64,000 bases of DNA from Styela clava (taxonomy: Eukaryota). Position 1 is the first letter of the stretch. Each line of letters opens with the position of its first letter. The position numbers and the translations under genes were made by a program. The stretch covers positions 23,622,001 to 23,686,000 of the forward strand of contig NC_135254.1 in NCBI RefSeq assembly GCF_964204865.1, read 5' to 3'. A model generated the notes under the pieces. That model saw nothing but the letters and a program-made list of their open reading frames with translations, did not search any database and had not been told where the DNA came from. This document shows positions 5,970 to 64,000 of the stretch, one piece after another.

Positions 5970-6320
5970 TAGGATAGGATAGGATAGGATTTACATATTT
6001 ATCCCGGGGGAGAGGAAAGCCGATAAGACGGCTTATTCATATGGCGAACCACGGTCTCTCGTCCGGTTACCATTCCAAGTCGGGTATGGGATTAGATTTA
6101 CTGTATTGTTTGTTTTCGGAAGCATGGACTTGGTGGTGGAGGAAGCCGTAACCGACCAGCGGTTACGTGAACCACCCAACGACGGCGAGGAGTCCAGCAA
6201 TCCTCTCGCACATAACCATCCCTGCATGGGATTCGAACCTGCGAACCCACGCAGAGTAGTTAGAGGTGCGGTGGCGAGCGTATTCCTAACGCTTAGCCCG
6301 TTGAGCCACACCGCCGCGCC
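5970..6320 (-). mobile_element. Full-length tRNA-derived SINE
   Basis: Minus strand starts GGCGCGGCGGTGTGGCTCAACGGG (Pol III A box), contains GGTTCGAATCC (B box) and ends in a (CCTAT)n tail. Related fragments lie at about 5660-5750, 14500-14630, 17580-17740, 19080-19260, 26398-26665 and 45590-45650. Confidence 0.85.
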
Positions 6321-19927: not shown

Positions 19928-20461
19928 ATGTCTACATTCAAATATTTTGGATATGCCAGTAACTTGGCAGATTACAAAGTAGGATTGGAATGTAAATCTT
20001 GTCGATTAGAAAGCATAGCGCGACTTGATGGCTTTACTTTGAGTTTTGGCGAGTATTGTCCGGATTGGTGTGGGGGTTCTGCCACATTAAGAATGGAGAC
20101 AGGATCTGAGGTTTGGGGAGCAGTCTGGGTTATTGACAACTCGGAGATGGATATTTTGGATGAGCAAGAACATGTTACCAGTGGCCAATACAAAGCGGTA
20201 ATCATCGAAGTTGTCGGCAAGGATGATCGAATTATACAATGTCGGGCATACGAACAGATAGACAAGCAGGGCGAACCAAGTAAACCGTCTCCGCAGTATT
20301 TAGCCGTGATTTTGGATGGAGCGAGAAAATGTGGATTGCCAAATGGATATATTGCTAAACTTGAAGCTGTTGAAACAAATGGTAACAGCGAAATAACGGA
20401 ACTCATGGTTGCAATCAGCGAACGACGCAAAGCATTTGGCCTTCTCAGTCCATTATTTTAA
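19928..20461 (+). CDS. GGCT: Gamma-glutamylcyclotransferase, 177 aa, intronless CDS
   Basis: YFGYASNL N-terminal motif, W.GGSATL, VWGAVW, LDEQE (catalytic Glu position), CRAYE, KPSPQYL.VI..GA...GLP..YI.KL..VETNG. Confidence 0.92.
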   Translation: MSTFKYFGYASNLADYKVGLECKSCRLESIARLDGFTLSFGEYCPDWCGGSATLRMETGSEVWGAVWVIDNSEMDILDEQEHVTSGQYKAVIIEVVGKDDRIIQCRAYEQIDKQGEPSKPSPQYLAVILDGARKCGLPNGYIAKLEAVETNGNSEITELMVAISERRKAFGLLSPLF

Positions 20462-21385: not shown

Positions 21386-24117
21386 AGATCCATCGACAGC
21401 ATCTAGCCACTTTCTTTTGCGCTCGTCAAACTACATTTGTGTTGCTGCGGGCATTTCGTTTTCCTGCTTAAAGCTTAGGGACTTGGGAAATATTTTATTA
21501 GTTGAAATGGATTGGAATATTCGACCTCGTCTTTCACTCCGAACAAGGCCATGTAAAACCATCCACTGGTATCTAACGATGTGTAACGTGTTTTCTTTTG
21601 GAGGAACCGGAACCTTTCAGGTGTGTAGCATTGACTTTGGCCAAATTAATATATCCTTGTGGAGATAAAAGGTATGCTTATGCGAAACCGAGATGTGCAC
21701 ATGTTACGCCAACATAGTTGAGTCAAACATTTTGATCACTAGTAAGTACATCACACCCATTTTCCTGCGTGCTTTGTTTGTACGTAGTAACGCGCACATT
21801 ATTGCGAGCATGCATCAAATTGCACTTGTTTATTGAGCTATAGGTTTTTGACGAGCTTTTGTGTATGATTTCGTTCAATAGAATTTGTATGCTGTTTTAA
21901 AGAATACTAGATTCAGCTTTTTTATTCATTCAAACCGCGTGTTGGAAGTAAGTTTTGTAATACTGCGTGTTGGTTTTTAAATGGTTTATTTATATCCATC
22001 AATTGACATCCTTAAATCGGTGATGCCAGTAAATCTTTAATACAAAAAAAAAACAGTATCATATGATAGGTGGGGGATGGATACTCATATTATCTGCTCC
22101 ATCGCGTGCCTCTTACCAGTTTACATGAGTGCCAATTGGTATTGGATTGGCAATTGGTAGTTTTTCAAGTGTGTAGATAGGTATAATCTTTTCCACGCTG
22201 TTGAGATGGGAATGCGCGAATATATCTGAGAATCGCTAATATTGGTTTGCAATGCGATGGAATCCCATCTTGGCATTTCTGCCTCTCGCAATTGCTGTTT
22301 ATATTTATCGGAGAAGTTCTGTGGCGTGGTTATCAAATGAAGAACACATGGGAGTATTTTTTCCACTTCTCTACTACTCTCAAACCTTGACATTTTGTCA
22401 AACCTTTTTTCCATTCAATCTTTTTTTTGAAACATCCCCACCAACCACAATTAGTTCTGTCATTAAACTTCCGAAACAAACAGATAAAATCATCAACAGA
22501 TGCATATCACCAAGTCCTAAGTAGATATTGCTAAATTGATCTTTATGTTACCATTTTTCATGTAATGCTTTTTGGTAAACCTGTTATCTATCGTAAATAC
22601 AGCACATTTGGCTATGTTGTAGTGTAACTTTTTTGGCCTCACATTTTTGATATTTGTATTCAGATCTCTTGGCCTTGGGGCTTTGTCAAACAAAGTTACA
22701 TATATATAAAATATTGGTTGTAAGTTGCAAAACATGATCATGCTGTTGGAATAACTCGCATTTTATCACCTGTATGTATATCATTCATTGTCGAGAATCA
22801 TAACGAAATCATAAAATCTAAAACCCGTTTTCGTGAATTTTTTGTTGTAGCTGAATTCGAGGGACAGCATGACAACAGGCACGAGAAGAACGGTAGCCTC
22901 TTATAGTTTATGACAGGGTTTCCTAAAAGGGGACCCCGGCCTCCTTGGAGGCCACTGATAGGTTATCTGGGAGCACGAACAAACAGATGGAAATGCGAAT
23001 ATATAATTACAATGTATTTTTATAGAAAAGAAGAAGCAAAAGTGTTGAAAGTCTTCGGTAGTTTGAATAGCATTGGCATTGAACATAAGAATGAACTACA
23101 TACTTTCCCAGGGATATACTATAAAATGTAGCAATTTCTCATTCTTGTTCTCGTGATAGCATTATCTTTCACTGCATCGTCGTGATCATCCCGCTGCATA
23201 ACAATCCTTGCTAGCAAATAATTGACTCTTCTCCACCGGGTGTATATCCACTTGAACCACTGCCGACTGCATTAGCAGGCTTGTATTGTTTATTGAAACA
23301 AAAAGCAGGTATTTTGAAATAGTACTCTTTATTTTACGCGTATGTTTCAACAGTATTTCCATATATATGGGTCGCCACCCAAAGCTGGGTTCAAAAAATA
23401 CCTAAAAGTTATTGATTTTTATTTCCTAGTAAATTTGGTGCCCCCGTAGTTTGTGCACCAAGATGGCACAACCTGAACATAGTACTGTAACAGGTTAGGT
23501 TTCAAGTTGTGCGCCATTGTTGCCAAATTGCTCAAGGCTGCAAACTCCACACCCATGTAGAAATGATGGGCAATAACCCCAAGATGAATAATCACAAATA
23601 AAAAACTTTATGTCTGAAAACAAGGTTGGGCCCAAAAAGGCCCCTTATCTGCCGGACTATTGTGGATATCTTCGAAAAATTCAATGCTAATAGTATGAGC
23701 TAAATGAGTCACTCGAAACGAGGTCATATTGAAGACTCGTGGCCACCACGCCCAAAAGTTGGTCAGCATTATATGTATGTATCGAAGGCTATAATTGTAT
23801 TCTCATTTTTATCTGTACCTGTTTTTATTTCAGTTCGATACAAGCTTTGTAATATATGGACATTCGGCTACCTAATGCTGAGTGATGATTATCTACCGCT
23901 GATGAGGTAGATTGGACCAATTCATATAAGAAAGCCAAATAGTATAGAATAGAGGGGAGAAATGCGCAAAAGTTAGGGGCAGATACCCACAGACCTTAAT
24001 ACCACAAAACAAAATACTTGGCCGTATGAAGATTTAAATTTATTTTGTTTATTGCCTCAATTAGTAAATTAAAGTACAAGCAGTTCATTCCTAGGAAATG
24101 AATATTTCATCTTTTGT

Positions 24118-27100
24118 TTACGAAACTATTCTATCCAACATCCTCATGACTGCTTTGATCTGCTCGCCATTGGCTGTTGCTGTAAATGAAAATATAGCAG
24201 TGCTTGAACACTGGTACATAAGAAAGGACACAATATTGATTTAGCCTATTTCGCGAACACTGAAATGTTTCTTGAATATATTTAATGTATATATATAAGA
24301 TACGAAATTGAAACAAAAACTTACCATAATACTCGCTGGTGAATCCCCACCTGCGCAAAAAATACCATGAATTATTTTGTTGTGCGGGTATCAGGCGTGA
24401 AGAAACCCACAAACTATCTGAGCCAATTTTTAAGTTTTAAAACACTCTACAGTCATAGTGCCACAAAAATGTCGTCTACAGAAAAATTGTGTTGTTATGG
24501 TGCAACGGTGGGCAAACCGCGACTCGCCGGAGTTTTATACAGCTCTTCTCGCTAGCAATAATTATATATTATCCAAATTTAACTAAGAGAAACTGTATCG
24601 TAACAGTTTTAATTCATTAAGCGGTTGAAGAAGCGTTCAACAATGATTAAGAAAAATTATGTTTTAGTATGAAAAGCGTAGAGTGGAATTTAATTTAAAT
24701 CAGTCAAACGACAAATCTTACATCCCAGCGATCAAATGTTTGTTGCTGCGTTGGCGGTTTGTTGTAGCTTTTTTGCGGTTAGTCTCCGCACTGCATTGTC
24801 TACATATCACCAAGACTTACAAACTTCCAGATAAGATGGAAACACACCAGTCAACTACTTCTGATATGTCCTCGCAATATATACTTTACAATATTGTTAT
24901 CATATTATTATTAGTTTGAAAAATTATGCGGCTCTTATACTAAAAAAAATTGCGTACCCCTGTTATAGTGCTTCGTTAAAATATTTTTTGGGGTCATTTC
25001 GTTGGTTGTATTGAAAATACAGGTAGATGATCGAAAAGGCAAATTTTGTAACTATAAATAAGTTGATCACTTTTTATATAAATGAAATTAAATAAAATTC
25101 TGCCACATTTTTTAAATGAAGTTTCAACTCATCTTAGCAGTTATTAATATGCTTCTAAAACCAATTTGCATAAACCAAATACAATAGCATACCAGTCCCA
25201 GCAACCCTGAGGATTTGTAATAAGATTCACTGATGTTCTCGGATAGAGTATGATAATGTTATTCAGAGCTGCAACTTCGTTATAACCCGCATCGTTAGCA
25301 AATGCTTCGGCTACGCTGTCGCTTGTCTTACATCCATGGAAAGCTACGTGCACGCGGCAACCTACAACATATTTAAGAGATCAAATTAGAGCGTTTTCAG
25401 ATCATGTCATATTGTATTTTTTGAACTTTTCGTTATTTTACTTTGTACTCCAAAAAGGAACTTCTGTTAGTTTTTTTGTAACTAGTATCATACGCTAAAT
25501 ATACTACTACTACGTCCCCTCAAAACAGCATGGGCATTGATGTGACTTTCTGGGAGCGCCAGAGGGACATAGCTAATAAAAATATAATAGCCTTTATTTA
25601 TAAACATAGTCTTTCCTGAGGCATATAGAATTTTTGTATGGTTAAATAGTTTTATAAGAAACATGATATATTCAAGAGAGACATGGCATATTGAGGGCGC
25701 TATAATATAAGATGACCGCTCACTTGTGGTTCCACTACTGCAGGACGTTGGCACAAATACCAGCCCGGTCTCATCCATAACAATATCTTTCGGATTTGAT
25801 GAATCCACAAAATCAGCTTGACTAAATTCTAGCAACTGTCCCTTCGGCAAATCATTGCTCTCATAATCCGGCATCTATAAGTCAATAACTATACATATAT
25901 ATTAGCATATTAAAATTATATCCATAAACAATTAGGTAAATCCCTACTGCCCGGGTATCGACGAAGCCCCGCGGATTTTCTATCTTTGTTGACTTGCTCG
26001 ATATCTTGTGGCACATAGGTACATAAGGAGCTTAATATTGCAGAGTAAAATTATAACACTTTTAACAATTACGATCTAACATAATAACATTACGAACATT
26101 TTTAACTAATTTTTTTTTTCCGAATCATGATAACAAATTAATGGACGTGAAATGCGGTTTTATTATCTGTGTCGTTAATTTGCCTTACTCAAAGTCAACC
26201 TGGCAAAATATAACTATTACCTGCAAGTTCCCGCCATAAATATGATTGAGAATATGATATGCCGCTGCAAATCCGCAATTATTTATATCATTGGTGTTTC
26301 TGAAGCCACAGAGTCCTCCTTTGTTCATTGTCGGCTTAACATAATTTATTGTGCAATAAGAAAATTATTTTGGTTGTCATTCTGTCATTCGGATATTGGC
26401 TCGATGGTGTGACGCATCGTGCTAAGCGAAAAGAATACGCTGGTCACCGCACCGCCGTAGGGTGGTTCCGTAAGCCCTGATTGGTTGGGACTTCCTCCAC
26501 CAATCCAGTCCATGTATCTGGAAACAAATGACTGGATAACTAATCCCATACCATACCCGACATGGACTGGTAACCGGGCGAGAGGCCGTGGTTCACCATA
26601 TATGATCAAGTCGTCTCATTAGATTTCCTTACCCATAGGGATAAATGTGTCAATCCCATCCTATCTCAAGAAGCATTGTACAGGCTGTAGAGCAGCAAAA
26701 CGACAAATATGTGCGGCTTTTGAAAATATACTCAATTCGACAAAATACCCTACCTCTATTCATTTTAAAACAAAATGCAACAAAATAGTTTTATAAGACG
26801 TAAATTGTCATTTCTGTAGCTGATAAGTCAATTATTTTGTTGGAAAATCGGAAAACAAAAACACGAGTTTCAAACTGAATCCGACCGGTAGAGTAGGCTT
26901 GAATAGACATAAATTGCATTAATTTCCGGTTTGTAAACAGTTGAATAAAATAGTATATACTCACAAATCCGTTCTGTGATGCAACATCGTATTCTGTTTT
27001 AATATTTGAAGGATTCACATAACTGAGATAAAATTCTTCTGCTTTTTCAACCACCCCTCAAGAAAAATAAAAGCTTGTAAGGCAATATTCATGTACTAAG

Positions 27101-30100
27101 TTTACCACAAGTTGTTTTATTCCTAAATATGTGAATCGAGGGTCTCAAAAATGCGTCATGGAATGCAAGGTGGGGCAAAAGTAGACTAATAGTTATTAAT
27201 CAATATAAATATATATATATATATTTAAATCCTATGATATTATACTAACAATTAAAAACTTGGAATGCTTTACATTTGTCAAACCATATTTTATTTGATT
27301 CGCGCTAACGCTCAGGTTAGACACTACTTGTGTGTATGATTGCCTACCTTTTAAAACTGTTGTGTCTTCTGTGCCGCTGTAAAGGTATACTTTGTCGTTA
27401 TTTAAGTTGGATAAATCTGGAACCGCACCACTTATGACGTAGTCCTGTGCATCAGATTTCAAAGTCGCCACATTTATACCCATCGGCATCGTCATGCAAT
27501 AGGTTGTCGCCAATGTTAGACTGTTTCTCGCACAATAATAAGGACCTAGAATATGAGAGTCATAGTTCCATTTCCAATCATCATTTTTGAGTAAAAAAGA
27601 TCAAAAAGAAGTAAGCAGTAGACAGAATATATATAGTGAAAAATATATATATATGAAAAAAAAAAATGTTTGGTTATCAATGGTTAGAACGACTGACTAC
27701 AGCCCCACTCATCAAAGTAAACTCATTTTTTTGTTCAGTACTGAGATGGGTGTTTCGCAGTCAGCATATTTTTCAATTAGCGATGGGTTTTGTGAAGCTC
27801 TGTGTTAGATATAAGAGACAAATTATATATAATATATATATGAAATTCGAACCACCACACGCAACGAAACAATTGAGCTCGTATACCTCCTGCTATTGCC
27901 CCGGCTCCCATTATATTATCGGATTCAGCAACATGCATTTGAATTGCCATATATCCACCCGAAGACAATCCACTTACTGAAATCGCATTTTTATCCGCTT
28001 TGTATGATCCTTAAAATATAGCAATGTTTGGTTATATCACGTGAATGGTTGGGCCCCGTTTGACGTTACTTAGTGAATTCAGCTCCCTACTAGATAAAAG
28101 CCTGAATCAGTAAAACGTCCGCATTTAACAAAATAGCCCACAAAAAATCGTGTAAAATTTATTTGAGTTTGATGTCGTTCAAAAAAAAGTCTGTTTAAAT
28201 GTATCACGCCTGTTCATTCGGAGGTCAGAACTTAAAATTAGAACTGAAATTACAGTGTATCCTGCTGATGTATAGTTTTGGTTTGACTAACCATTTTTTT
28301 TTGTTTCTTTGGTATGTGTGGTAAACAAAATTAAACCATTTTACCCAAAACTCCATCCTCAATAGAAGACCCTGGCTTTGTTGTTGTTTTCGGTTCAGTA
28401 ACTAAAAATAAATGAAAAAATATGTTTAATAATTATAATCAACAAGAACATCTAAACCAACCTTCTAAATCTAGCCCATATTTACAAACCAATATTTGAA
28501 ACTAGCTTTTTTAGTTATCATACTGAAACGTTCGCTATGATAAAATAAGCCGGAGACTAACTTTTGATAGTTGATGCGTCTGTTGGTACTACGTCAGGAG
28601 TTGTTGTAATCATTGTAGGTGCTGACGATGACGTCATAGCTGTTGAACCCGATGTCAGTCTTTTTACCATGTTCATTATTGCTACTACTTGTTTGCCATT
28701 GTGGTACGCTGCAAAATTATGAAGTTGAAAAAAAGGTATAAAAACCAGGGATGGGGTTTTACTACTACACTTAGGTATATATATATAAATATATAATAGG
28801 TTGAACTTTGAATTTTAAACGGCATTTCAACAAAACTGAATTCAATTTATTCAAAATACTGAGACAATTCATCATTGTTTTTAAACATAGTTTAGTCAGA
28901 GCTTCGAGGTATTACTAACAGTTGGAACTATAAAATCGCATCGCATGATCCATCTAGCAACCTACCGTAGTTTGAGTCGGTGTATCCCCAACTGCAATAA
29001 AAAAAAACACATGACAAAAAGATATGAATAGCTCATGTTTACATAATATATTACGTGCAGATATGCTACCTTTTTAAATGATTGATCCTATATGTAACGG
29101 AATTATCAGATCGAAAAAGCTCATTAAATTACTATTTCGGGTATTTTTTAAAGAATTATGGAAAAATAATTTAGATTTGACTAGATTTAAAATTGAAACA
29201 TCACGAGTTTTAATTAAACATTATTGGATACGTTTCAACTATCTTTGATATTGTACGATATGGCACGTTTCAGGCGACAATCAAATTCAGTAAATCTGGA
29301 ATGATGCAAGACCAAAACAGTGAAATTGGAATTGCAGACCGTATAATTATTCAGTTATACTTGAAGAAAATTATTCTTAAACGCTCTAAACTCTAATTTA
29401 ACAATATGTATCAATATACATGCGTGATAAAACATAAGAAAAATCGATAGGTTTGTGTTTTAACTTACAAGTCCCAACACCCATTGGGGTTGGAGATGGG
29501 AATGACTGACGCTTGAGGATATATAACAATAATATTATTCAATGCCGAAACCTCATTATAACCAGTCTGCATAACATAAGAATCTCCGATGAAGCTATCC
29601 CCTTGTTTACATCCATGTATAGAAACATGTAGACGGCATGCTGGAAAATTCAGAACGTTCAAAATAACCTATATATATATATATATCACCCATTAGCCTA
29701 CATCACTCAACAACTCAAGCTTTTAATACAAAGGAAGTTAGGTTCCATTTAAATGACGGTGACAATTTTGGTATTACATACTATTGAACTGTTAAGGTCG
29801 AATTTTCAGTATTCTCATAGTTATAGGCAATAATAAACAAACATGAGATTTCTAGACACCTAGACAACGTGCTGATATAGTCGATACCATATTGCCTTGG
29901 TATCGAAGAACGCAGTTTCAATCTTGTTACAGCTGTACAGTTGGAAAATTTGCCTTGCATTATAATTAGATAACAAAATTACAATACATTCTGTTGCTCC
30001 AGCGCAGGAATCTGGCACAAAAATATATCCTTTGGAATCCATTCCAATCGATGACGGATTTAGAGTATCTATGAATTCAGATTGGTCAAATGCCAAAACC

Positions 30101-32289
30101 GTGCCTCGCGGAGCAGGAGCTGTCAACGAATAACTGGGAACCTAAATAATAAAGTCTATTTGTAATACTTCATTTCAAATAGTTGTTTATTGGCTACTGA
30201 AATGAGCTCTTGTGAACATTACTCAATACTACGTTCCTAGATTGGCTGATAGAGTAATCTAATCATTTCTCGAGTTATATGTCTGCTGATCAATTACCAT
30301 AACCCTGTTTTGCTATCTTGTCCTTCTTGATGTTGCCCACGTGTGTGAGTGTTGGAAGACAAAAAGAATCATTGGCTACATTTAGTTCAAACTGATTATG
30401 AGGTCGGAGAATTTGTGATTGGACCCCGATTTGTCTTATTGTAACGTATTTCTATGATTCAGGTACCTCGAGGTTTCCGCCGTATATGTGATTAAGAAGA
30501 TGATAAGCAGAATCGTAATCACAGTCATTTATGTAAGTTGGTGTGTATATTCTGTTACACGCTCCACCATTGTCCATTGTGACCTGGGATTTGGAAAAAA
30601 GAATTTAGAATCGAAGAAAGTTTTAATACTACTGGAATACTGCAATCGAATACAAATATTGTCACATAAAAGACTATTATCTCACAAATCCATGCTCTGC
30701 AACAATGTCATACTGTGTCAAAATGTTGGCGGGATTAACAAACTCTTCGTAGAACTCCTGAGCTTTCGTCATCACACCTGAGAATAAAATGTTCTATTAT
30801 GTTATGTTCTTTCAAAAGCTGTCTTTTATGACTGGAAACTTTACCCACCTGGCTTGACGATCGAATCCTCTTTTCCACTAAATAGATAGAGTTTTGAATT
30901 GTACAGATGATCTAGCGAGCTTATTCGACCCAAGTCAGCTTGTGCTTTTGCGTTTTCTATCAAACTTTTTACTTGTATCATATAAGGTGATGACATGCAT
31001 GCTGTCAAAGCAGTTGATAGAGAATCCTGTGCGCAGTTGTATGGACCTGTAATACGGGGGAAAGGGTTTATATAATGACACAGATTGTAAAATCTATTTC
31101 ATCACAATGTACTCTATACGTAATACGCTAGGTAATGTTTTGTAAATTAAACGAAACTAGAAACGGCAGATCTATTCGAAGGTTTGACAAAATCTCCATT
31201 CACTTGGTATAATGGGTTTCTTGTATGTGTAGTTACAATTAAAACAAGATACGATCGCATGCACTACGGAAATGGTTGAGTGTGCTGAAAATGACGTCAG
31301 CATTTGGCCTATCGATTTTCTGAACCGATAAAGCTATATGATGTGCGTTACCCTTACCTCCAGCTACAACTCCAGCACCCATGAAAGTATCAGATTCAAT
31401 GATATGCATTTGTACTGCCATAAATCCTCCCGACGATAATCCACTAACAGAAATTGCAGTAGTATCAATGTTATAGGATCCTCATCGAATAAAAAAAAAA
31501 TTGTTCAACAAATAGCCAATTCAGAATACTTAATTCATATATTGCATTTCATCACTTTTCATATTGCTAAATCGAGTCGACTCCACTACTAACACATCTG
31601 ATTTCCCATTATTCATTACACAAATTGAAAATTTTCTGCTTCATCTTGGTTTCTAATGTTAAATATTTACTTATCACAATTAAAGAGTTTGCTGGCAGAA
31701 AATTGCCCTTCAAAATTTTTGAAAATTAAGCCATTATGGAATATTCTAACCCTGTGGTTTCGAACCTTTTTTGTGGAACGAAACACCAATGAAACATTCC
31801 CGAGGCTCGAATCACCATACAGTTCATTTAATTGTCTTTTATTGATTGTCGAAGTATATAAAACATAAATGTATAAATAGAGGAATCCTCCTAATACTAA
31901 CAGAATGAACTTATAATATTAGTAAATTCAATACACATTTAATTATATAAATTTAAGCAATAAACATAATATAGTAATATAGACTCTGGACTGGACCCCT
32001 GTACTGTACTGGCGGAACGCTGGGATGCAGCGGAACCTTGGTTGAAAACCACTTTTCTAGACGTGTGCGTTTTAAGAACTCAAAACTATTGTTATCAAAT
32101 TGCAATTTAATAATTAAACATGACAATGTCAGTCAGCCTTTGAATCTGCTTCAATTTTGTGCCCTAAACTTAGTTAGGCCTACATCAAAACTTACCAAGC
32201 TTTCCTTCGTTTGAAGCAGCGAAACTTGAATAACAGTAGAGACAAAATATGCAATATACAAGTTGCCATATTCGTATGGAATTCATCAT
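24118..32289 (-). CDS. Secreted two-domain poly(3-hydroxybutyrate) depolymerase-like protein (fungal PhaZ type), about 704 aa, 18 exons (copy B)
   Basis: Signal exon 32289-32196. Domain 1: 31480-31358, 31046-30849, 30777-30686, 30583-30467, 30141-29988, 29640-29469, 28991-28966, 28708-28562. Linker exon 28401-28345. Domain 2: 28009-27887, 27545-27348, 27056-26965, 26334-26221, 25874-25724, 25361-25193, 24350-24325, 24179-24118. All phases fit (2115 nt). Motifs: ISVSGLSSGG(F/Y)MA.QMH, GAG..AGGPY.CA, SG.EDxxV, AEHGF, YIFVP.SC, CRLHVSIHGC.Q, GYNEV.ALNNII..YPQ, NP.GCWD(F/W)WG. Confidence 0.88.
26398..26665 (+). mobile_element. Internally deleted copy of the tRNA-derived SINE, in a depolymerase intron
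   Basis: Colinear with the reverse complement of 5970-6320 (GCTAAGCG..GAATACGCT.G.CACCGCACC, CTTCCTCCACCA, GGTAACCGG, GGGATAAAT...CCTATC). The B-box segment is missing. Confidence 0.75.
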
Positions 32290-34112: not shown

Positions 34113-37100
34113 TTAAACTATTTTACCCAAAACTCCATCTTCAATAGAAGATTCTGGCTTTGTTGTTGTCTTCGGTTCAACAGCTGAAAATAAATGAAAA
34201 AATCACGTTTTAATAATCAACAAGAACATCGAAACCAACCTTCTAGCTAGCCTATATTTACAAACCAATATTTGAAACTTGTTTTTTTAGTTACGTTATG
34301 CTGTGATAAAATACGCTTAAGACTAACTTTTTATAGATGATGCTTCTGTTGGTACTACCGTAGGAGATGTTGTAATAACTGTAGGTGCGGGCGATGATGT
34401 CATAGTCTTCGAATCAGATGTCAGTCTTTTAACCATGTTCATTATTGCTACTACTTGTTTGCCATTGTGGTACGCTACGAAATTATAGTGTGGAAAAAAA
34501 ACTTGTTATAAATATCAGGGCTGAAGTTTGACTATTAAACTATTAAAAAGTATATATAAAATAAGTTGAACTTTGAATTTTAAACAGCATTTCAACAAAA
34601 CGGAAATCAATTTAATCAACATATTGAAACAAAGCATATCTGTTTTTAAACATAGATTAGAGATTATAATTTTTCCTAACAGTTAGAACTATAAAATCGC
34701 ATCGCTTGATTCAATCTAGCAACCTACCGTAGTTTGAGTCGGTGTATCCCCAACTGCAATCGAAAAAACAAAACAAATGACAATAGATATGAATAGTACA
34801 TGTTTACCTATACTACGTGCAAATCTGCTACATTTTTAAACGATTGATCACGTATGCGGCAGAAATATCAGAAACATCTTATTAATTGCTATTTCGTGTA
34901 CTTTTTAAAGAATTATGGAAAATAAATTAGGATATGTCTACATTGAAAACTGAAACATCACGAGTTTTAATTTAACAAGATCGGATACGTTTCAACTATC
35001 TTTGATACTGTTCGATATTGCACGTTTCATGGACAATTAAATTCAGTAAATCTGGAATGATGCAAGACCAAAAAAGTGGAAAATTTGAATTGCATATCGT
35101 AGAATTATTCAATTATACTTGAAAAAAATTATTTATTCCAAACGTTTGTTGAACTCTTATTTAACAATATGCATACGTGATAAAACATAAACATGTTGAT
35201 AGGATTGTGTTCCAACTTACAAGTCCCAACATCCATCGGGGTTGGAGATGGGAATCACTGACGCTTGAGGATATATGACAATAATATTATTCAATGCCGC
35301 AACCTCATTATAACCAGTCTCCATAACATACGAATCTCCGATGAAGCTATCACCTTGTTCACATCCATGAATAGAAACATGTAGACGGCATGCTGAAAAA
35401 TTCAAAACTTTCAAAATAACCTATATATATATATCACCCATTAGCCTACATCACTCAACAACTCAGGCTTTTAATACAAAGGAAATTAGATTCCAAGAAA
35501 ATGACGGTGGCCGTTTTGGCTACTACTATTAAACTGCTATAGTCAAATTTTCAGTACTCTCTTAGTTAACGTTATAGGTAAAAATAAACGAAACATACTA
35601 TTTTTAGACACCCAGACAAAATGCTGATACAGTCGATACTATATTGCCTCGGTATCGAAGAACGCGGTTTCAATCTTGTTACAGTTGTAAAGCTAGGAAA
35701 TTCGCATTGTATTATGAATAGCTAATGAAATTACAATACTTTCTGTTGCTCCAGTGCAGGAATCTGGCACAAAAATATACCCTTTGGAATCCATTCCAAT
35801 TGATGACGGGTTCAGAGAATTAATGAATTCAGATTGGTCATATGTAAAAACCGTGCCTCGCGGAGCAGGAGCTGTCGACGAATAACTTGGAACCTGAATA
35901 TTAAAGTATCTCCGTAAAACTCAATTGCAAATAGTTGATTATTGCTTACTGAAGTGTAAACTCTTGTGAACATTACTTAATATTACGTAATAGGATGGCT
36001 GATAGAATAGTGTTTTCGTTTTACGAGCTATGTGATTGCAGACTATCGATTACACTCTTTCGCTATATCTTTTCCTCCTTGAATCATGTGTGTCAGTGCT
36101 TGAAGACAAAAAGAATCATTCGCTACATTTTATTCAAACCTGTTTTAAGATCACAGGATTTGTAATGGGATCCTGATTCTTGTAGCACATATATATCTGT
36201 GATTTTCGTACCTCGAGGTTTCCGCCGTATATGTGATTAAGAAGATGATAAGCAGAATCGTAATTACAGTCATTTATGTAAGTTCTGTATATTCTGTTAC
36301 ACGCTCCACCATTGTTCATTGTGACCTGAAATTTGAAATAAGGAATTTAGAATCGAAGAAAGTTTTAATACTACCGGAATACTATACTGCAATCGAATAC
36401 TAATATTGTCACATAAAAGCTATTATCTCACAAATCCATGCTCTGCAACAATGTCATACTGTGTCAAAATGTTGGCGGGATTAACAAACTCTTCGTAGAA
36501 TTCCTGAGCTTTCGTCATCACACCTGGGAATAAAATGTTCTATTATGTTGTGTTCTTTCAAAGGCTGTCTTTTAGGATTGGATACTCTACTCACCTGGCT
36601 TGACGATCGAATCCTCTTTTCCACTAAAAAGATAGAGTCTAGAATTGTACAGATTATTGAGCGAGCTTATTCGACCCAAGTCAGCTTGTGCTTTTGCGTT
36701 TTCTATTAAACTTTTTGCTTGTATCATATATGGTGAAGACATGCATGCTGTCAAAGAATTTGATAGAGAATCATGTGCGCAGTTGTATGGACCTGTAACA
36801 CAGGAGGAAAAGGTTTATATAATGACACAGAAATTCTATTTCATCACAATGTTTTAACTGACTATTCAATGTTTCGTATTAAACTGAGACAAGAAACAAC
36901 AGATCTATACGAAGGTTTGAAATAATGCTCATTCACTGTGTGTGTAGTTACAATTAAAACAATATAGGATGGCATGCACTATGGAAATTGTTGAGCGTGA
37001 TGATAAATGAGGTCAACATTTGGCCTATCGATTTTCTGTACCGTTAAAGCTATTTGATGTGCGCTACCCTTACCTCCAGCTACAACTCCAGCACCCATGA

Positions 37101-37910
37101 AAGTATCAGATTCAATGACATGCAGCTGTACTGCCATAAATCCTCCCGACGAGAATCCACTAACAGAAATTGCAGCAGTATCAATATTGTAGGATCCTCA
37201 TCAAAAAAAAAAAATCAGTCAACAAATAGCTGTATCAGAATACTTAATTCATTATTCATATATTATGTTTCATCACATTTCATATATATTGCTAAATTGA
37301 ATGGTTTCATTACATTTGAACCCACAACAATTGCACCTATGAACTTTTTTTTTTCGGATATTTGAACACATACTAACCCTAACCCATGGATTTAGCACCC
37401 GCAAATAGATTGAACCCGTGAAAATTAACCTATTGTGGATTATTCTAGACAGGTGGTTTAGAACCTTTTTCGTGAAAGAAAACTCCAATGAAACATTCCA
37501 GAGCCTCCATAAAATTCATTTAATGGTCTCTTATTGCAAAAACAAATATATATGTATATATAGAGCAATCCTCCTAATACAGACAAAATGATTCTATAAT
37601 ACTAGCAAACACAATACACATTTATTCATATTTAAATATGAATAATATAGACTCTGGACTGTACTGGCGGAACACTAGGGTTCAGCGGAATATGGACGTG
37701 TTCGTTTACGAACTCAAAACTATTGTTATAAAATTGCAATTGAAGCCTCTGAATAATTAAACATAACAATGTCAGTCAGCCTCTGAATCCCTAAACTTAG
37801 TTACACCAACACTTACCAAGCTTTCCTTCGTTTGGAGCAGCGAAACTTGAATAACAGTAGAGACAAAATATGCAACATAAAAGTTGCCATATTCGTATGA
37901 AATTCATCAT
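34113..37910 (-). CDS. PHB depolymerase-like partial duplicate (copy A): signal peptide, one catalytic domain and a Ser/Thr linker; about 396 aa if it reads through the last donor
   Basis: Exons 37910-37817, 37196-37074, 36792-36595, 36523-36432, 36325-36212, 35893-35740, 35392-35221, 34753-34728, 34474-34328, 34183-34127. All are in frame with intact splice sites. Triad intact (GFSSG, SGKEDSIV, AEHGF). The 3' end is ambiguous: read-through to TAA at 34115-34113, or splicing into 31480. Confidence 0.82.

Positions 37911-40601: not shown

Positions 40602-64000
<23,399 letters not shown>

What the first reader, a model, noticed from the sequence alone, without database searches (positions are those of the whole stretch)
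26965..27056. Second depolymerase domain has lost its catalytic His (His to Asn): a fused pseudo-enzyme
Seen: domain 1 reads YDIVAEHGF (His codon 30694-30692). The homologous 92-nt exon of domain 2 reads YDVASQNGF (AAC at 26973-26971). Domain 2 keeps Ser (GLSSG), Asp (GTEDTTV), HGC, the cysteines and an open frame over 8 exons. It also keeps the more canonical FPT and CWDWWG motifs where domain 1 has FVT and CWDFWG. Established: bacterial PHB depolymerases often use catalytic domain + linker + substrate-binding domain. Inference: this animal may have rebuilt that layout by using a dead duplicate as the polymer-binding module.
Basis: partly seen in the sequence, partly recalled or inferred. Interest (0 to 1): 0.8.

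Follow-up and report, generated by a model that had tools for sequence, protein, structure and literature searches.

The report
Sea-squirt depolymerase with dead second domain
A sea-squirt gene for an enzyme that digests bacterial storage polyester (PHB) appears to carry a second, intact copy of the enzyme domain in which the essential catalytic histidine is replaced by asparagine, so this copy probably binds the polymer rather than cutting it.

Summary
On the minus strand, the 92-nt exon 27056-26965 reads ..YDVASQNGF, with AAC at 26973-26971. The homologous exons of the two upstream units read ..YDIVAEHGF. That column is His in 310 of 312 homologous domains and aligns with catalytic His155 of the Penicillium funiculosum PHB depolymerase (2D80).

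The window, from Styela clava or a very near relative, holds three type-2 PHA-depolymerase units: A, B and C. C has no start or signal exon. Its first exon accepts in the same phase as the donor of B's Ser/Thr/Pro-rich linker exon, so a B-linker-C protein of about 702 residues is frame-compatible.

C is old (52% identical to B) but constrained:
- pN is 0.31 against a saturated pS of 0.82.
- It shows no significant rate excess over B.
- All 8 exons, Ser, Asp, HGC and 8 Cys are intact.
- It has no new His.

Not shown:
- No read covered the AAC codon.
- No transcript of C or of a B-C junction was seen.
- Polymer binding is inference.

A protist (Diphylleia) has an independently duplicated two-domain homologue whose second domain has Ser changed to Thr. 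Animal PHA depolymerases were published in 2026, so this is a new variant of a known kind. Earlier scan notes concern this same window only.

The parts
28345..32289 (-). Unit B ('domain 1'). Exons: signal 32289-32196, Ser 31480-31358, Asp 31046-30849, His 30777-30686, then 30583-30467, 30141-29988, HGC exon 29640-29469, WG exon 28991-28966, and linker exons 28708-28562 and 28401-28345.
   Evidence: Exon table with AG/GT flanks is. Spliced joints 29469/28991, 28966/28708 and 28562/28401 were seen in a paralogous (unit A) transcript contig.
30692..30694 (-). CAT, the catalytic His codon of unit B.
   Evidence: It lies in profile column 157.
28345..28708 (-). Linker. It comprises the second half of exon 28708-28562 (GSTAMTSSSAPTMITTTPDVVPTDASTIK) and exon 28401-28345 (TEPKTTTKPGSSIEDGVL), which ends in phase 1 at G|gtaaaa.
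   Evidence: Ser+Thr+Pro make up 24 of 47 residues.
24118..28009 (-). Unit C ('domain 2'). Exons: 28009-27887 (Ser, GLSSGG), 27545-27348 (Asp, GTEDTTV), 27056-26965 (Asn in place of His), 26334-26221, 25874-25724, 25361-25193 (HGC), 24350-24325 and 24179-24118 (ends in TAA). It has no start or signal exon.
26965..27056 (-). The exon of the finding, ..YDVASQNGF.
   Evidence: It is 66% identical over 29 residues to the frog (Spea) homologue P0295.
26971..26973 (-). AAC (Asn) at the catalytic His column.
34127..37910 (-). Unit A, a younger copy of B (265 of 290 columns identical). It has its own signal exon 37910-37817 and linker exons up to 34183-34127.
   Evidence: It is transcribed and spliced in run X8.

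Best explanation
Units B and C together encode one secreted protein of about 702 residues (counted exon by exon). It consists of a signal peptide, an active type-2 PHA-depolymerase domain (Ser-Asp-His, HGC oxyanion hole), a linker of about 50 residues rich in Ser, Thr and Pro, and a second complete depolymerase-like domain.

In the second domain the general-base His is Asn, so this domain cannot, or can barely, hydrolyse ester bonds. It keeps the fold, the disulfide cysteines, the nucleophile elbow, the oxyanion loop and the Trp that I recall as recognising the substrate. It has been kept by selection as a non-catalytic module. Its most likely role is to adsorb to PHB granules or hold a polymer chain in its crevice and present it to domain 1, the role played by the substrate-binding domain of bacterial enzymes.

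Shown: the sequence facts, the homology, the long-term constraint and the frame compatibility. Inferred: the fusion transcript, the loss of activity and the binding role.
For: Catalytic position:
- His is found at this column in 310 of 312 homologous domains.
- The column maps to 2D80 His135, which is His155. Ser39, Asp121 and His155 are named as the triad in passages of PMC5445757.

No substitute His: C's His residues lie at columns 47, 186, 190, 246 and 250, all shared with A and B, and none lies in an insert.

Constraint on C:
- Between B and C, pN is 0.313 and pS is 0.816 (saturated) over 286 codons.
- Changes unique to C against those unique to B do not differ significantly with any of 10 outgroups. 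C has more in 7 of 10, and the lowest p is 0.055.
- All 8 exons have AG/GT sites at the same positions and phases as in B.
- C matches the consensus at 45 of 53 columns that are at least 90% conserved.

Fusion:
- tblastn with B's signal exon finds it only upstream of A and B.
- The 336-nt gap before C holds no plausible start exon.
- The linker donor and C's acceptor are both phase 1, like the signal-to-Ser-exon junction.
- The alignment of a unit-A transcript contig ends exactly at the homologous donor, so that donor is used.

Precedent:
- Diphylleia rotans P0151 (728 aa) has domain, Thr/Pro linker and a second domain with GLTAG. Its two domains group together in an NJ tree, which indicates an independent duplication.
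- A catalytically dead S39A enzyme of this fold binds a 3HB trimer (2D81; passage).
- The springtail homologue P0221 adds a CBM14 module.
Against: - No read or contig covered the AAC codon independently.
- Run X8, which is RNA as shown by its spliced joints, covered no exon of C and held no B-identical sequence. It covered only unit A.
- What follows A's linker donor in that contig (142 nt) is unknown, so even for A the downstream partner is not shown.
- If the linker donor is not used, the frame stops 4 codons later (..GVLGKMV*), and an AATAAA lies at 28163. A one-domain product of B is therefore possible.
- C deviates from the consensus at 8 of 53 highly conserved columns, against 4 of 53 for B. 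The deviations include the Gln of HGCxQ and the Gln of YPQ. This could equally mean early decay.
- Binding was not tested.
- A structure model could not be made, because joining exons was barred.
Confidence: 0.45

Rival explanations
1. Unit C is a silent or dying relic. It is an old tandem paralogue that lost its first exon and then its catalytic His, is no longer part of any product, and looks intact only because the loss is recent.
For: C has no start or signal exon. None of its 8 exons is covered in the RNA-like run X8. It departs more often from highly conserved columns than B does, at 8 against 4 of 53. One X5 contig joins 24927 to 28492, skipping six C exons, though one side lies about 20 bases beyond the edge of a dispersed repeat.
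Against: Between B and C, pN is 0.31 against a saturated pS of 0.82, and amino-acid change on the two lineages is near-equal. There is no stop, no frameshift and no lost splice site in 8 exons. The His exon itself is 66% identical to a frog homologue. Absence from one run's contigs does not show silence.
Confidence: 0.2
2. Domain 2 is non-catalytic but does something other than bind PHB. It might stabilise or regulate domain 1, bind another polymer or a surface (mucus, tunic, gut matrix), or act as a spacer.
For: The same evidence of constraint and triad loss applies. Other animal homologues add unrelated modules, such as CBM14 in Orchesella.
Against: The crevice-related features of the family are kept in C: the Trp column 299, HGC and the lipase box. 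These would not be needed for an unrelated role.
Confidence: 0.15
3. Domain 2 is still an enzyme. It would act either with very low activity through Ser/Asp and water, or with a changed substrate or chemistry.
For: Ser, Asp, the oxyanion-hole Cys and the fold signatures are all kept. Rare homologues with Tyr or Phe at the His column also exist as otherwise conserved proteins.
Against: His is the general base of the alpha/beta-hydrolase triad (established knowledge). It is present in 310 of 312 homologues. C has no compensating His.
Confidence: 0.1
4. The AAC is an assembly error or a rare allele of CAC.
For: AAC and CAC differ by one base. No independent read covered the codon.
Against: Neighbouring residues also differ from B (ASQNGF against VAEHGF). 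Three other near-invariant residues are changed only in C: columns 254, 284 and 302. This fits an old loss rather than a one-base slip. The assembly has a single copy.
Confidence: 0.07

Closest known systems
Animal PHA depolymerases (Zeidler et al. 2026, PMC13642032), e.g. Olavius algarvensis PHAD and Ciona intestinalis XP_002119263.3 (P0060)
   Same: They share the type-2 order (lipase box before the oxyanion hole), a signal peptide, many introns and a domain of about 330 residues. Units A and B are 48-50% identical to the Ciona protein over 289-290 columns. Ciona scores 365.5 bits on NF050059.
   Different: [quoted passage not shown] The words tandem, inactive and linker do not occur in the main text. 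Here there are three units, a linker, and one unit without the His. Supplementary tables were closed.
Penicillium funiculosum PHB depolymerase (PDB 2D80 / 2D81)
   Same: It is the best solved relative. Ser39, Asp121, His155 and Cys250 align with columns 37, 123, 157 and 252. It has no separate binding domain and binds the polymer in a hydrophobic crevice (passage).
   Different: It is a single active domain. Unit C has Asn at His155. Units A and B have Phe where 2D80 has Trp287 in chain numbering, which I recall as Trp307 with a role in substrate recognition. That role comes from memory, not from a call.
Bacterial modular PHB depolymerases (e.g. Ralstonia pickettii T1): catalytic domain, linker, substrate-binding domain
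   Same: The layout is the same: a catalytic domain, a Thr-rich or Fn3 linker and a C-terminal adsorption module (passage in PMC5445757). Bacterial hits with Fn3 and C-terminal modules appear.
   Different: The C-terminal module here is a whole depolymerase-like domain of about 309 residues, not the small bacterial binding domain. It is an analogy of layout, not homology of the module.
Diphylleia rotans two-domain PHAD (EP00002_P037724, P0151)
   Same: It has two type-2 domains joined by a Thr/Pro-rich linker and is 728 aa long. Its second domain lacks one triad residue, with GLTAG in place of GLSAG. A one-domain isoform also exists, identical over the first 341 residues.
   Different: A different triad residue is lost (Ser to Thr, with His kept). 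The duplication is independent by the NJ tree. It is a transcriptome model from a protist.
Tandem enzyme / pseudoenzyme pairs such as receptor tyrosine phosphatase D1-D2
   Same: An active first domain is followed by an inactive homologous second domain that is kept for a non-catalytic role (abstract listing of 10.1101/805119; otherwise general knowledge).
   Different: The fold and biology are unrelated. This is cited only as the general pattern.

Membership tests
Type-2 extracellular scl-PHA depolymerase catalytic domain (NCBIfam NF050059; 2D80-like; animal PHADs) | Collinear similarity to the whole 305-position model, above the 280-bit cut-off | tested here: inconclusive
   Exons hit the model in order. 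For B: positions 4-42, 44-108, 112-140, 142-175, 180-217 and 221-278, with per-exon bits of 51.2, 51.4, 13.2, 24.4, 28.3 and 78.5. For C: 50.8, 50.0, no hit, 19.8, 26.8 and 71.3. The whole-protein cut-off cannot be applied without joining exons, which was left out. Ciona and frog homologues score 365.5 and 371.
Type-2 extracellular scl-PHA depolymerase catalytic domain | Lipase box G-x-S-x-G placed before the oxyanion-hole motif HGC | tested here: met
   GLSSGG lies in the first domain exon and HGC in the sixth, in B and in C.
Type-2 extracellular scl-PHA depolymerase catalytic domain | Catalytic triad Ser-Asp-His | tested here: not met
   The triad is met in A and B. In C, Ser (column 37) and Asp (column 123) are present, but column 157 is Asn. 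C is therefore a homologue of the family but is not filed as an active member.
Type-2 extracellular scl-PHA depolymerase catalytic domain | Hydrolysis of PHB | not testable with these tools
   An enzyme assay is needed.
Pseudoenzyme domain | Clear homology to an active enzyme family, with a key catalytic residue missing | tested here: met
Pseudoenzyme domain | Kept by selection, not a decaying pseudogene | tested here: met
   pN is 0.31 against pS 0.82. Lineage changes are near-equal. The frame and splice sites are intact over 8 exons. This speaks for most of C's history and not specifically for the time since the His was lost.
Pseudoenzyme domain | Expressed as protein | tested here: inconclusive
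   No C exon is covered in the one RNA-like run laid.
Modular catalytic-linker-binding PHB depolymerase layout | Linker rich in Thr/Ser/Pro between two folded modules in one reading frame | tested here: met
   Ser, Thr and Pro make up 24 of 47 linker residues. The phase-1 donor and phase-1 acceptor are shown. The transcript itself is not shown.
Modular catalytic-linker-binding PHB depolymerase layout | C-terminal module homologous to the bacterial substrate-binding domains | tested here: not met
   The C-terminal module is a PHAD-like domain. It may work like a binding domain, but it is not one by descent.

The most novel reading that the evidence does not exclude
Eukaryotes have at least twice independently (an ascidian and the protist Diphylleia) rebuilt the bacterial 'catalytic domain - linker - binding domain' design of PHB depolymerases. 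They did so by duplicating the catalytic domain in tandem and disabling one triad residue of the C-terminal copy (His to Asn here, Ser to Thr there). The dead copy now serves as the polymer-adsorbing or chain-feeding module. In the ascidian there is a division of labour: domain 1 keeps the triad but has Phe at the Trp that I recall as recognising the substrate, while domain 2 keeps that Trp but not the His.
Probability: 0.3. Interest if true: 0.65.

Novelty: new variant of a known kind. Interest (0 to 1): 0.5.

Why it matters
Animal PHA depolymerases were only described in 2026, as single-domain enzymes with a fully conserved triad. A naturally fused, selected, triad-defective second domain would be the first pseudoenzyme reported in this family. 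It would suggest how animals, which lack the bacterial binding domain, hold on to an insoluble polyester. It would also give a natural template for binding modules in engineered polyester-degrading enzymes.

The claim is easy to test by RT-PCR across one junction, a PHB plate assay and granule pull-down. If the second domain turns out to be unexpressed, the finding reduces to an old tandem paralogue on its way out.

Tried and rejected
- Pfam PF10503 against the whole genome found nothing. Pfam models this circularly permuted type poorly, and even the Ciona enzyme scores below the cut-off. NCBIfam NF050059 was used instead.
- The His exon alone gives no PDB match; only an unrelated 1b0z hit at E 0.63 appeared. 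The His was therefore mapped through the full-length Ciona protein and a profile built from 24 database proteins.
- I tested whether B's second linker exon derives from a former signal exon of C. The local DNA alignment score was 17, against a maximum of 24 in 200 shuffles, so this is rejected.
- I looked for a hidden start exon for C in the 336-nt gap before it. No ATG-led hydrophobic frame was found there.
- I looked for close orthologues to date the His loss. None is available:
  - The best representative hit reaches only 86.7 bits for the Asp exon profile.
  - No Styela PHAD appears among the 120 listed relatives of the Ciona protein.
  - No two-domain protein appears among the 120 listed relatives of P0151; all cover at most 54% of it.
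- I looked for haplotigs carrying an alternative codon. There is one copy only.
- C as an orthologue of the amphibian enzymes was suggested by per-exon best hits. It received only 22 of 200 bootstrap replicates, against 117 of 200 for A+B+C together, so it is weak either way.
- An X5 contig joins 24927 to 28492 (table 5c). The stretch 24500-24905 is a dispersed repeat with at least 59 genomic matches, while 28420-28560 is unique apart from unit A. This is left unexplained.
- No structure model of domain 2 was made, and no whole-protein family score was computed, because both need the exons joined.
- The supplements of PMC13642032, which list the animal species and may include Styela, were closed.
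Full report
**What is in the sequence**

On the minus strand the window holds three homologous units (tblastn of unit B's exon translations against the window):
- A lies at 37910-34127.
- B lies at 32289-28345.
- C lies at 28009-24118.

I derived every exon with its AG/GT flanks and phase. The exon of the finding, 27056-26965, is 92 nt long and is flanked by cttgag| and |gtgagt. After a split Gly codon it reads VVEKAEEFYLSYVNPSNIKTEYDVASQNGF, and the Asn codon AAC is at 26973-26971. The homologous exons of B (30777-30686) and of A read ..YDIVAEHGF. The His codon CAT of B is at 30694-30692.

Unit C has eight exons with the same intron positions and phases as B and ends in TAA at 24120-24118.
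- GLSSGG, SGTEDTTV and HGC.
- NGF|PT in C against HGF|VT in B.
- CWD-W-WG in C against CWD-F-WG in B, the W and the F being split codons.

The whole genome holds only these three units: 3 of 3 candidates matched with C's HGC exon. It holds one copy of the His-exon region.

**What family it is**

Pfam's PF10503 finds nothing in the genome and is weak even on full-length relatives. NCBIfam NF050059, 'extracellular catalytic domain type 2 short-chain-length polyhydroxyalkanoate depolymerase', matches the exons of B and C one after another along its 305 positions.

The best solved relative is the Penicillium funiculosum PHB depolymerase, 2D80/2D81. The Ciona homologue P0060 matches it at E 3.7e-49. 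In that alignment the Ser, Asp and His of the family fall on chain residues 19, 101 and 135. With the 20-residue offset these are the Ser39, Asp121 and His155 named as the triad in PMC5445757, which also names Cys250 of the oxyanion hole (passages read).

I built a profile from 24 database proteins of 300-360 residues and aligned each exon to it separately. The His of A and B and the Asn of C all fall in column 157, together with the Ciona His.

**How unusual the Asn is**

Column 157 is His in 202 of 202 domain hits that cover it (291 proteins in hand). After adding relatives of the Ciona protein it is His in 310 of 312 (405 domain hits in 395 proteins). The two exceptions are P0309 (Tyr) and the N-terminally incomplete Saccoglossus model P0363 (Phe). 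None is Asn.

In the same set, Asp is found in 392 of 392 and Cys of HGC in 283 of 283. Ser is found in 305 of 307, the exceptions being a Thr in Diphylleia domain 2 and an Asn in P0094.

C has His only at columns 47, 186, 190, 246 and 250, all shared with A and B. No new His could take over.

**The organism and what is published**

A single-exon GGCT-like gene at 19928-20461 is 99% identical to a Styela clava protein. The window is therefore from that ascidian or a very near relative.

Zeidler et al. 2026 (PMC13642032; abstract and sections 6, 9 and 10 read) describe PHA depolymerases in more than 66 animal species of nine phyla, including chordates. [quoted passage not shown]

The words tandem, inactive, linker, 'two catalytic' and Styela do not occur in the main text. 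Its supplements were closed. A search for 'Styela clava' plus depolymerase gave one unrelated review. No paper combined 'PHB depolymerase' with pseudoenzyme or tandem-domain terms among the 10 listed of 35.

The enzyme family in animals is therefore known. The dead second domain is not in what I could read.

**Is unit C alive?**

- B and C share 148 of 286 profile columns (52%). B shares 145 of 289 with Ciona, and C shares 128 of 291.
- By Nei-Gojobori counts summed over exons, pS between B and C is 0.816 (saturated) and pN is 0.313. Between A and B, dS is 0.138, dN is 0.038 and omega is 0.275.
- With ten outgroups, changes unique to C against those unique to B never differ at p < 0.05. C has more in 7 of 10. 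The extremes are 38 against 23 with Ciona (p = 0.055) and 28 against 36 with Cyprideis.
- An NJ tree on the profile columns puts A, B and C together in 117 of 200 bootstraps. C groups with the amphibian enzymes in 22 of 200.
- C's His exon is 66% identical over 29 residues to the frog homologue.

C is therefore an old paralogue that has evolved under purifying selection at about the pace of the active copy. That does not fit long-standing decay.

Against this, C departs from the consensus at 8 of 53 columns that are at least 90% conserved, while B departs at 4 of 53. Five of C's departures are unique to it: columns 104, 157, 254 (the Gln of HGCxQ), 284 (the Gln of YPQ) and 302. This may reflect relaxed constraint around a disabled active site, or early decay. 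The date of the His loss cannot be set without orthologues, and none was found.

**Is it fused to B?**

Several facts point to fusion:
- C has no signal or start exon. B's signal exon has homologues only upstream of A and B.
- The 336 nt before C hold no plausible start exon.
- The only in-frame Met in C's first exon lies after the nucleophile Ser.
- B does not stop where C's last exon stops. It runs on through GSTAMTSSSAPTMITTTPDVVPTDASTIK and a further exon TEPKTTTKPGSSIEDGVL, in which Ser, Thr and Pro make up 24 of 47 residues.
- That exon ends in phase 1 at G|gtaaaa. C's first exon begins in phase 1 after tattttaag|, exactly as the signal exon joins the first domain exon.
- The junction would read ..EDGVL-G-SYKADKNAISVSGLSSGG, which starts domain 2 where the mature domain 1 starts.
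- Counting exon by exon gives about 393 + 309 = 702 residues.

**What the reads say (one call allowed)**

- The Hi-C run X7 gave no unique cover.
- X5 holds short contigs that each show 0 to 5 differing letters from the window. The one nearest the codon covers 26993-27184, so the AAC was not independently read.
- X8 holds a 544-nt contig with the joints 29469/28991, 28966/28708 and 28562/28401. All have GT..AG ends on the minus strand, so it is RNA.
- All 11 of 11 listed variant letters of that contig equal unit A's letters. Unit A is therefore transcribed and spliced through both linker exons.
- The alignment ends exactly at the donor of the second linker exon, although the next 7 intron bases of A and B are identical. 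The donor is therefore used, and 142 nt continue somewhere outside 24100-30099.
- X8 shows no B-identical sequence and no cover of any C exon.

The linker donor is thus a real donor in the sister unit. A B-to-C transcript is not shown, and C was not detected in this one run. If the donor is skipped, the frame ends 4 codons later, and an AATAAA lies at 28163. A one-domain form of B is also possible.

**Parallels**

The representative search listed 150 of 797 hits, and 149 of them had a single matched stretch. Cluster look-up nevertheless revealed Diphylleia rotans P0151, of 728 residues. It has two type-2 domains joined by a Thr/Pro-rich linker. The second domain has GLTAG instead of GLSAG and keeps its His. 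A one-domain isoform shares the first 341 residues. The two Diphylleia domains group together in the tree, so that duplication is separate from the ascidian one.

P0158, from a metagenome, is the tail of one domain, an acidic Thr/Pro linker and a full second domain with an intact triad. Of the three tandem cases seen, two have a triad-defective C-terminal domain.

The springtail enzyme P0221 carries a CBM14 module. Many bacterial relatives carry Fn3 and C-terminal modules. Adding a non-catalytic module behind this catalytic domain is therefore common.

**How it most likely works**

Established facts:
- The His is the general base of the triad.
- Bacterial enzymes need a binding domain to adsorb to, and disturb, crystalline PHB.
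- The fungal single-domain enzyme binds a chain in a hydrophobic crevice, and its S39A mutant still binds a 3HB trimer (passages of PMC5445757).

Inference: domain 2 folds like the enzyme and still takes up a polymer chain or sticks to the granule surface, but cannot cleave. Tethered by a flexible, probably O-glycosylated linker, it keeps the active domain 1 on its insoluble substrate.

In 2D80 the residue aligned with column 299 is chain Trp287. I recall it as Trp307, with a role in recognising the ester next to the scissile bond. That role comes from memory and not from a call. It is Trp in C and Phe in A and B, and it is Trp in 276 of 278 homologues. This hints at a division of labour between the domains.

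I put this reading at 0.45. The rivals are:
- an unexpressed relic (0.2);
- another non-catalytic role (0.15);
- residual or altered catalysis (0.1);
- an error or a rare allele (0.07).

**Verdict**

This is a new variant of a known kind and is of moderate interest. It is a neat, cheaply testable candidate for the first pseudoenzyme domain in the newly described animal PHA depolymerases, with an independent protist parallel. It still lacks transcript, read and biochemical support.

Noticed in passing
window 34127-37910 (unit A); laid on 28345-29640: A spliced transcript contig in run X8 carries unit A's letters at 11 of 11 listed variant places. It ends its match exactly at the donor of the second linker exon, with 142 nt continuing outside the laid stretch. 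It may join B's first domain exon, giving a multi-domain product, or it may join another exon.
   Followed up: partly
window 19928-20461 (+): A single-exon gamma-glutamylcyclotransferase-like gene is 99% identical to a Styela clava protein. This identifies the organism.
   Followed up: yes
protein P0151 / P0002 (Diphylleia rotans transcriptome): These are two isoforms. One has a single PHAD domain (348 aa) and one has two domains (728 aa), whose second domain has Thr in place of the nucleophile Ser.
   Followed up: partly
proteins P0309, P0363 (Saccoglossus kowalevskii), P0094: These are other natural homologues with a broken triad: His to Tyr, His to Phe, and Ser to Asn. Stand-alone dead depolymerase paralogues may therefore exist in other animals, despite the published statement of complete triad conservation.
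   Followed up: partly
protein P0158 (JGI metagenome, 408 aa): This is a fragment of another tandem PHAD: the end of one domain, an acidic Thr/Pro linker, and a second domain with an intact triad.
   Followed up: partly
window 24500-24905: A dispersed repeat of about 400 nt lies in the intron between C's HGC exon and its WG exon. It has at least 59 genomic matches among 352 candidates and is also present in the RNA-like run.
   Followed up: partly
window about 26500-26700: A very abundant repeat lies in the intron after the exon of the finding. Depth is in the thousands in runs X5, X7 and X8, and a 76% identical copy lies at 5978-6198 in the window.
   Followed up: no
window 24927 / 28492: One X5 contig (depth 8.6) joins these two places with 25 other letters between them. 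It skips six exons of unit C and B's last linker exon. It could be a deletion allele or a repeat artefact; this was not resolved.
   Followed up: partly
window 48451-49760 (+): Two long open frames look like a hAT/ZBED-type transposase. This is judged from reading the translation only.
   Followed up: no
run X7 (Hi-C, same species label): About 1.9 billion letters were read, yet there was no unique cover of the 6-kb stretch, only repeats. This is odd for a run labelled as the same species.
   Followed up: no
protein P0221 (Orchesella cincta): This springtail PHA depolymerase carries a C-terminal chitin-binding CBM14 domain.
   Followed up: partly
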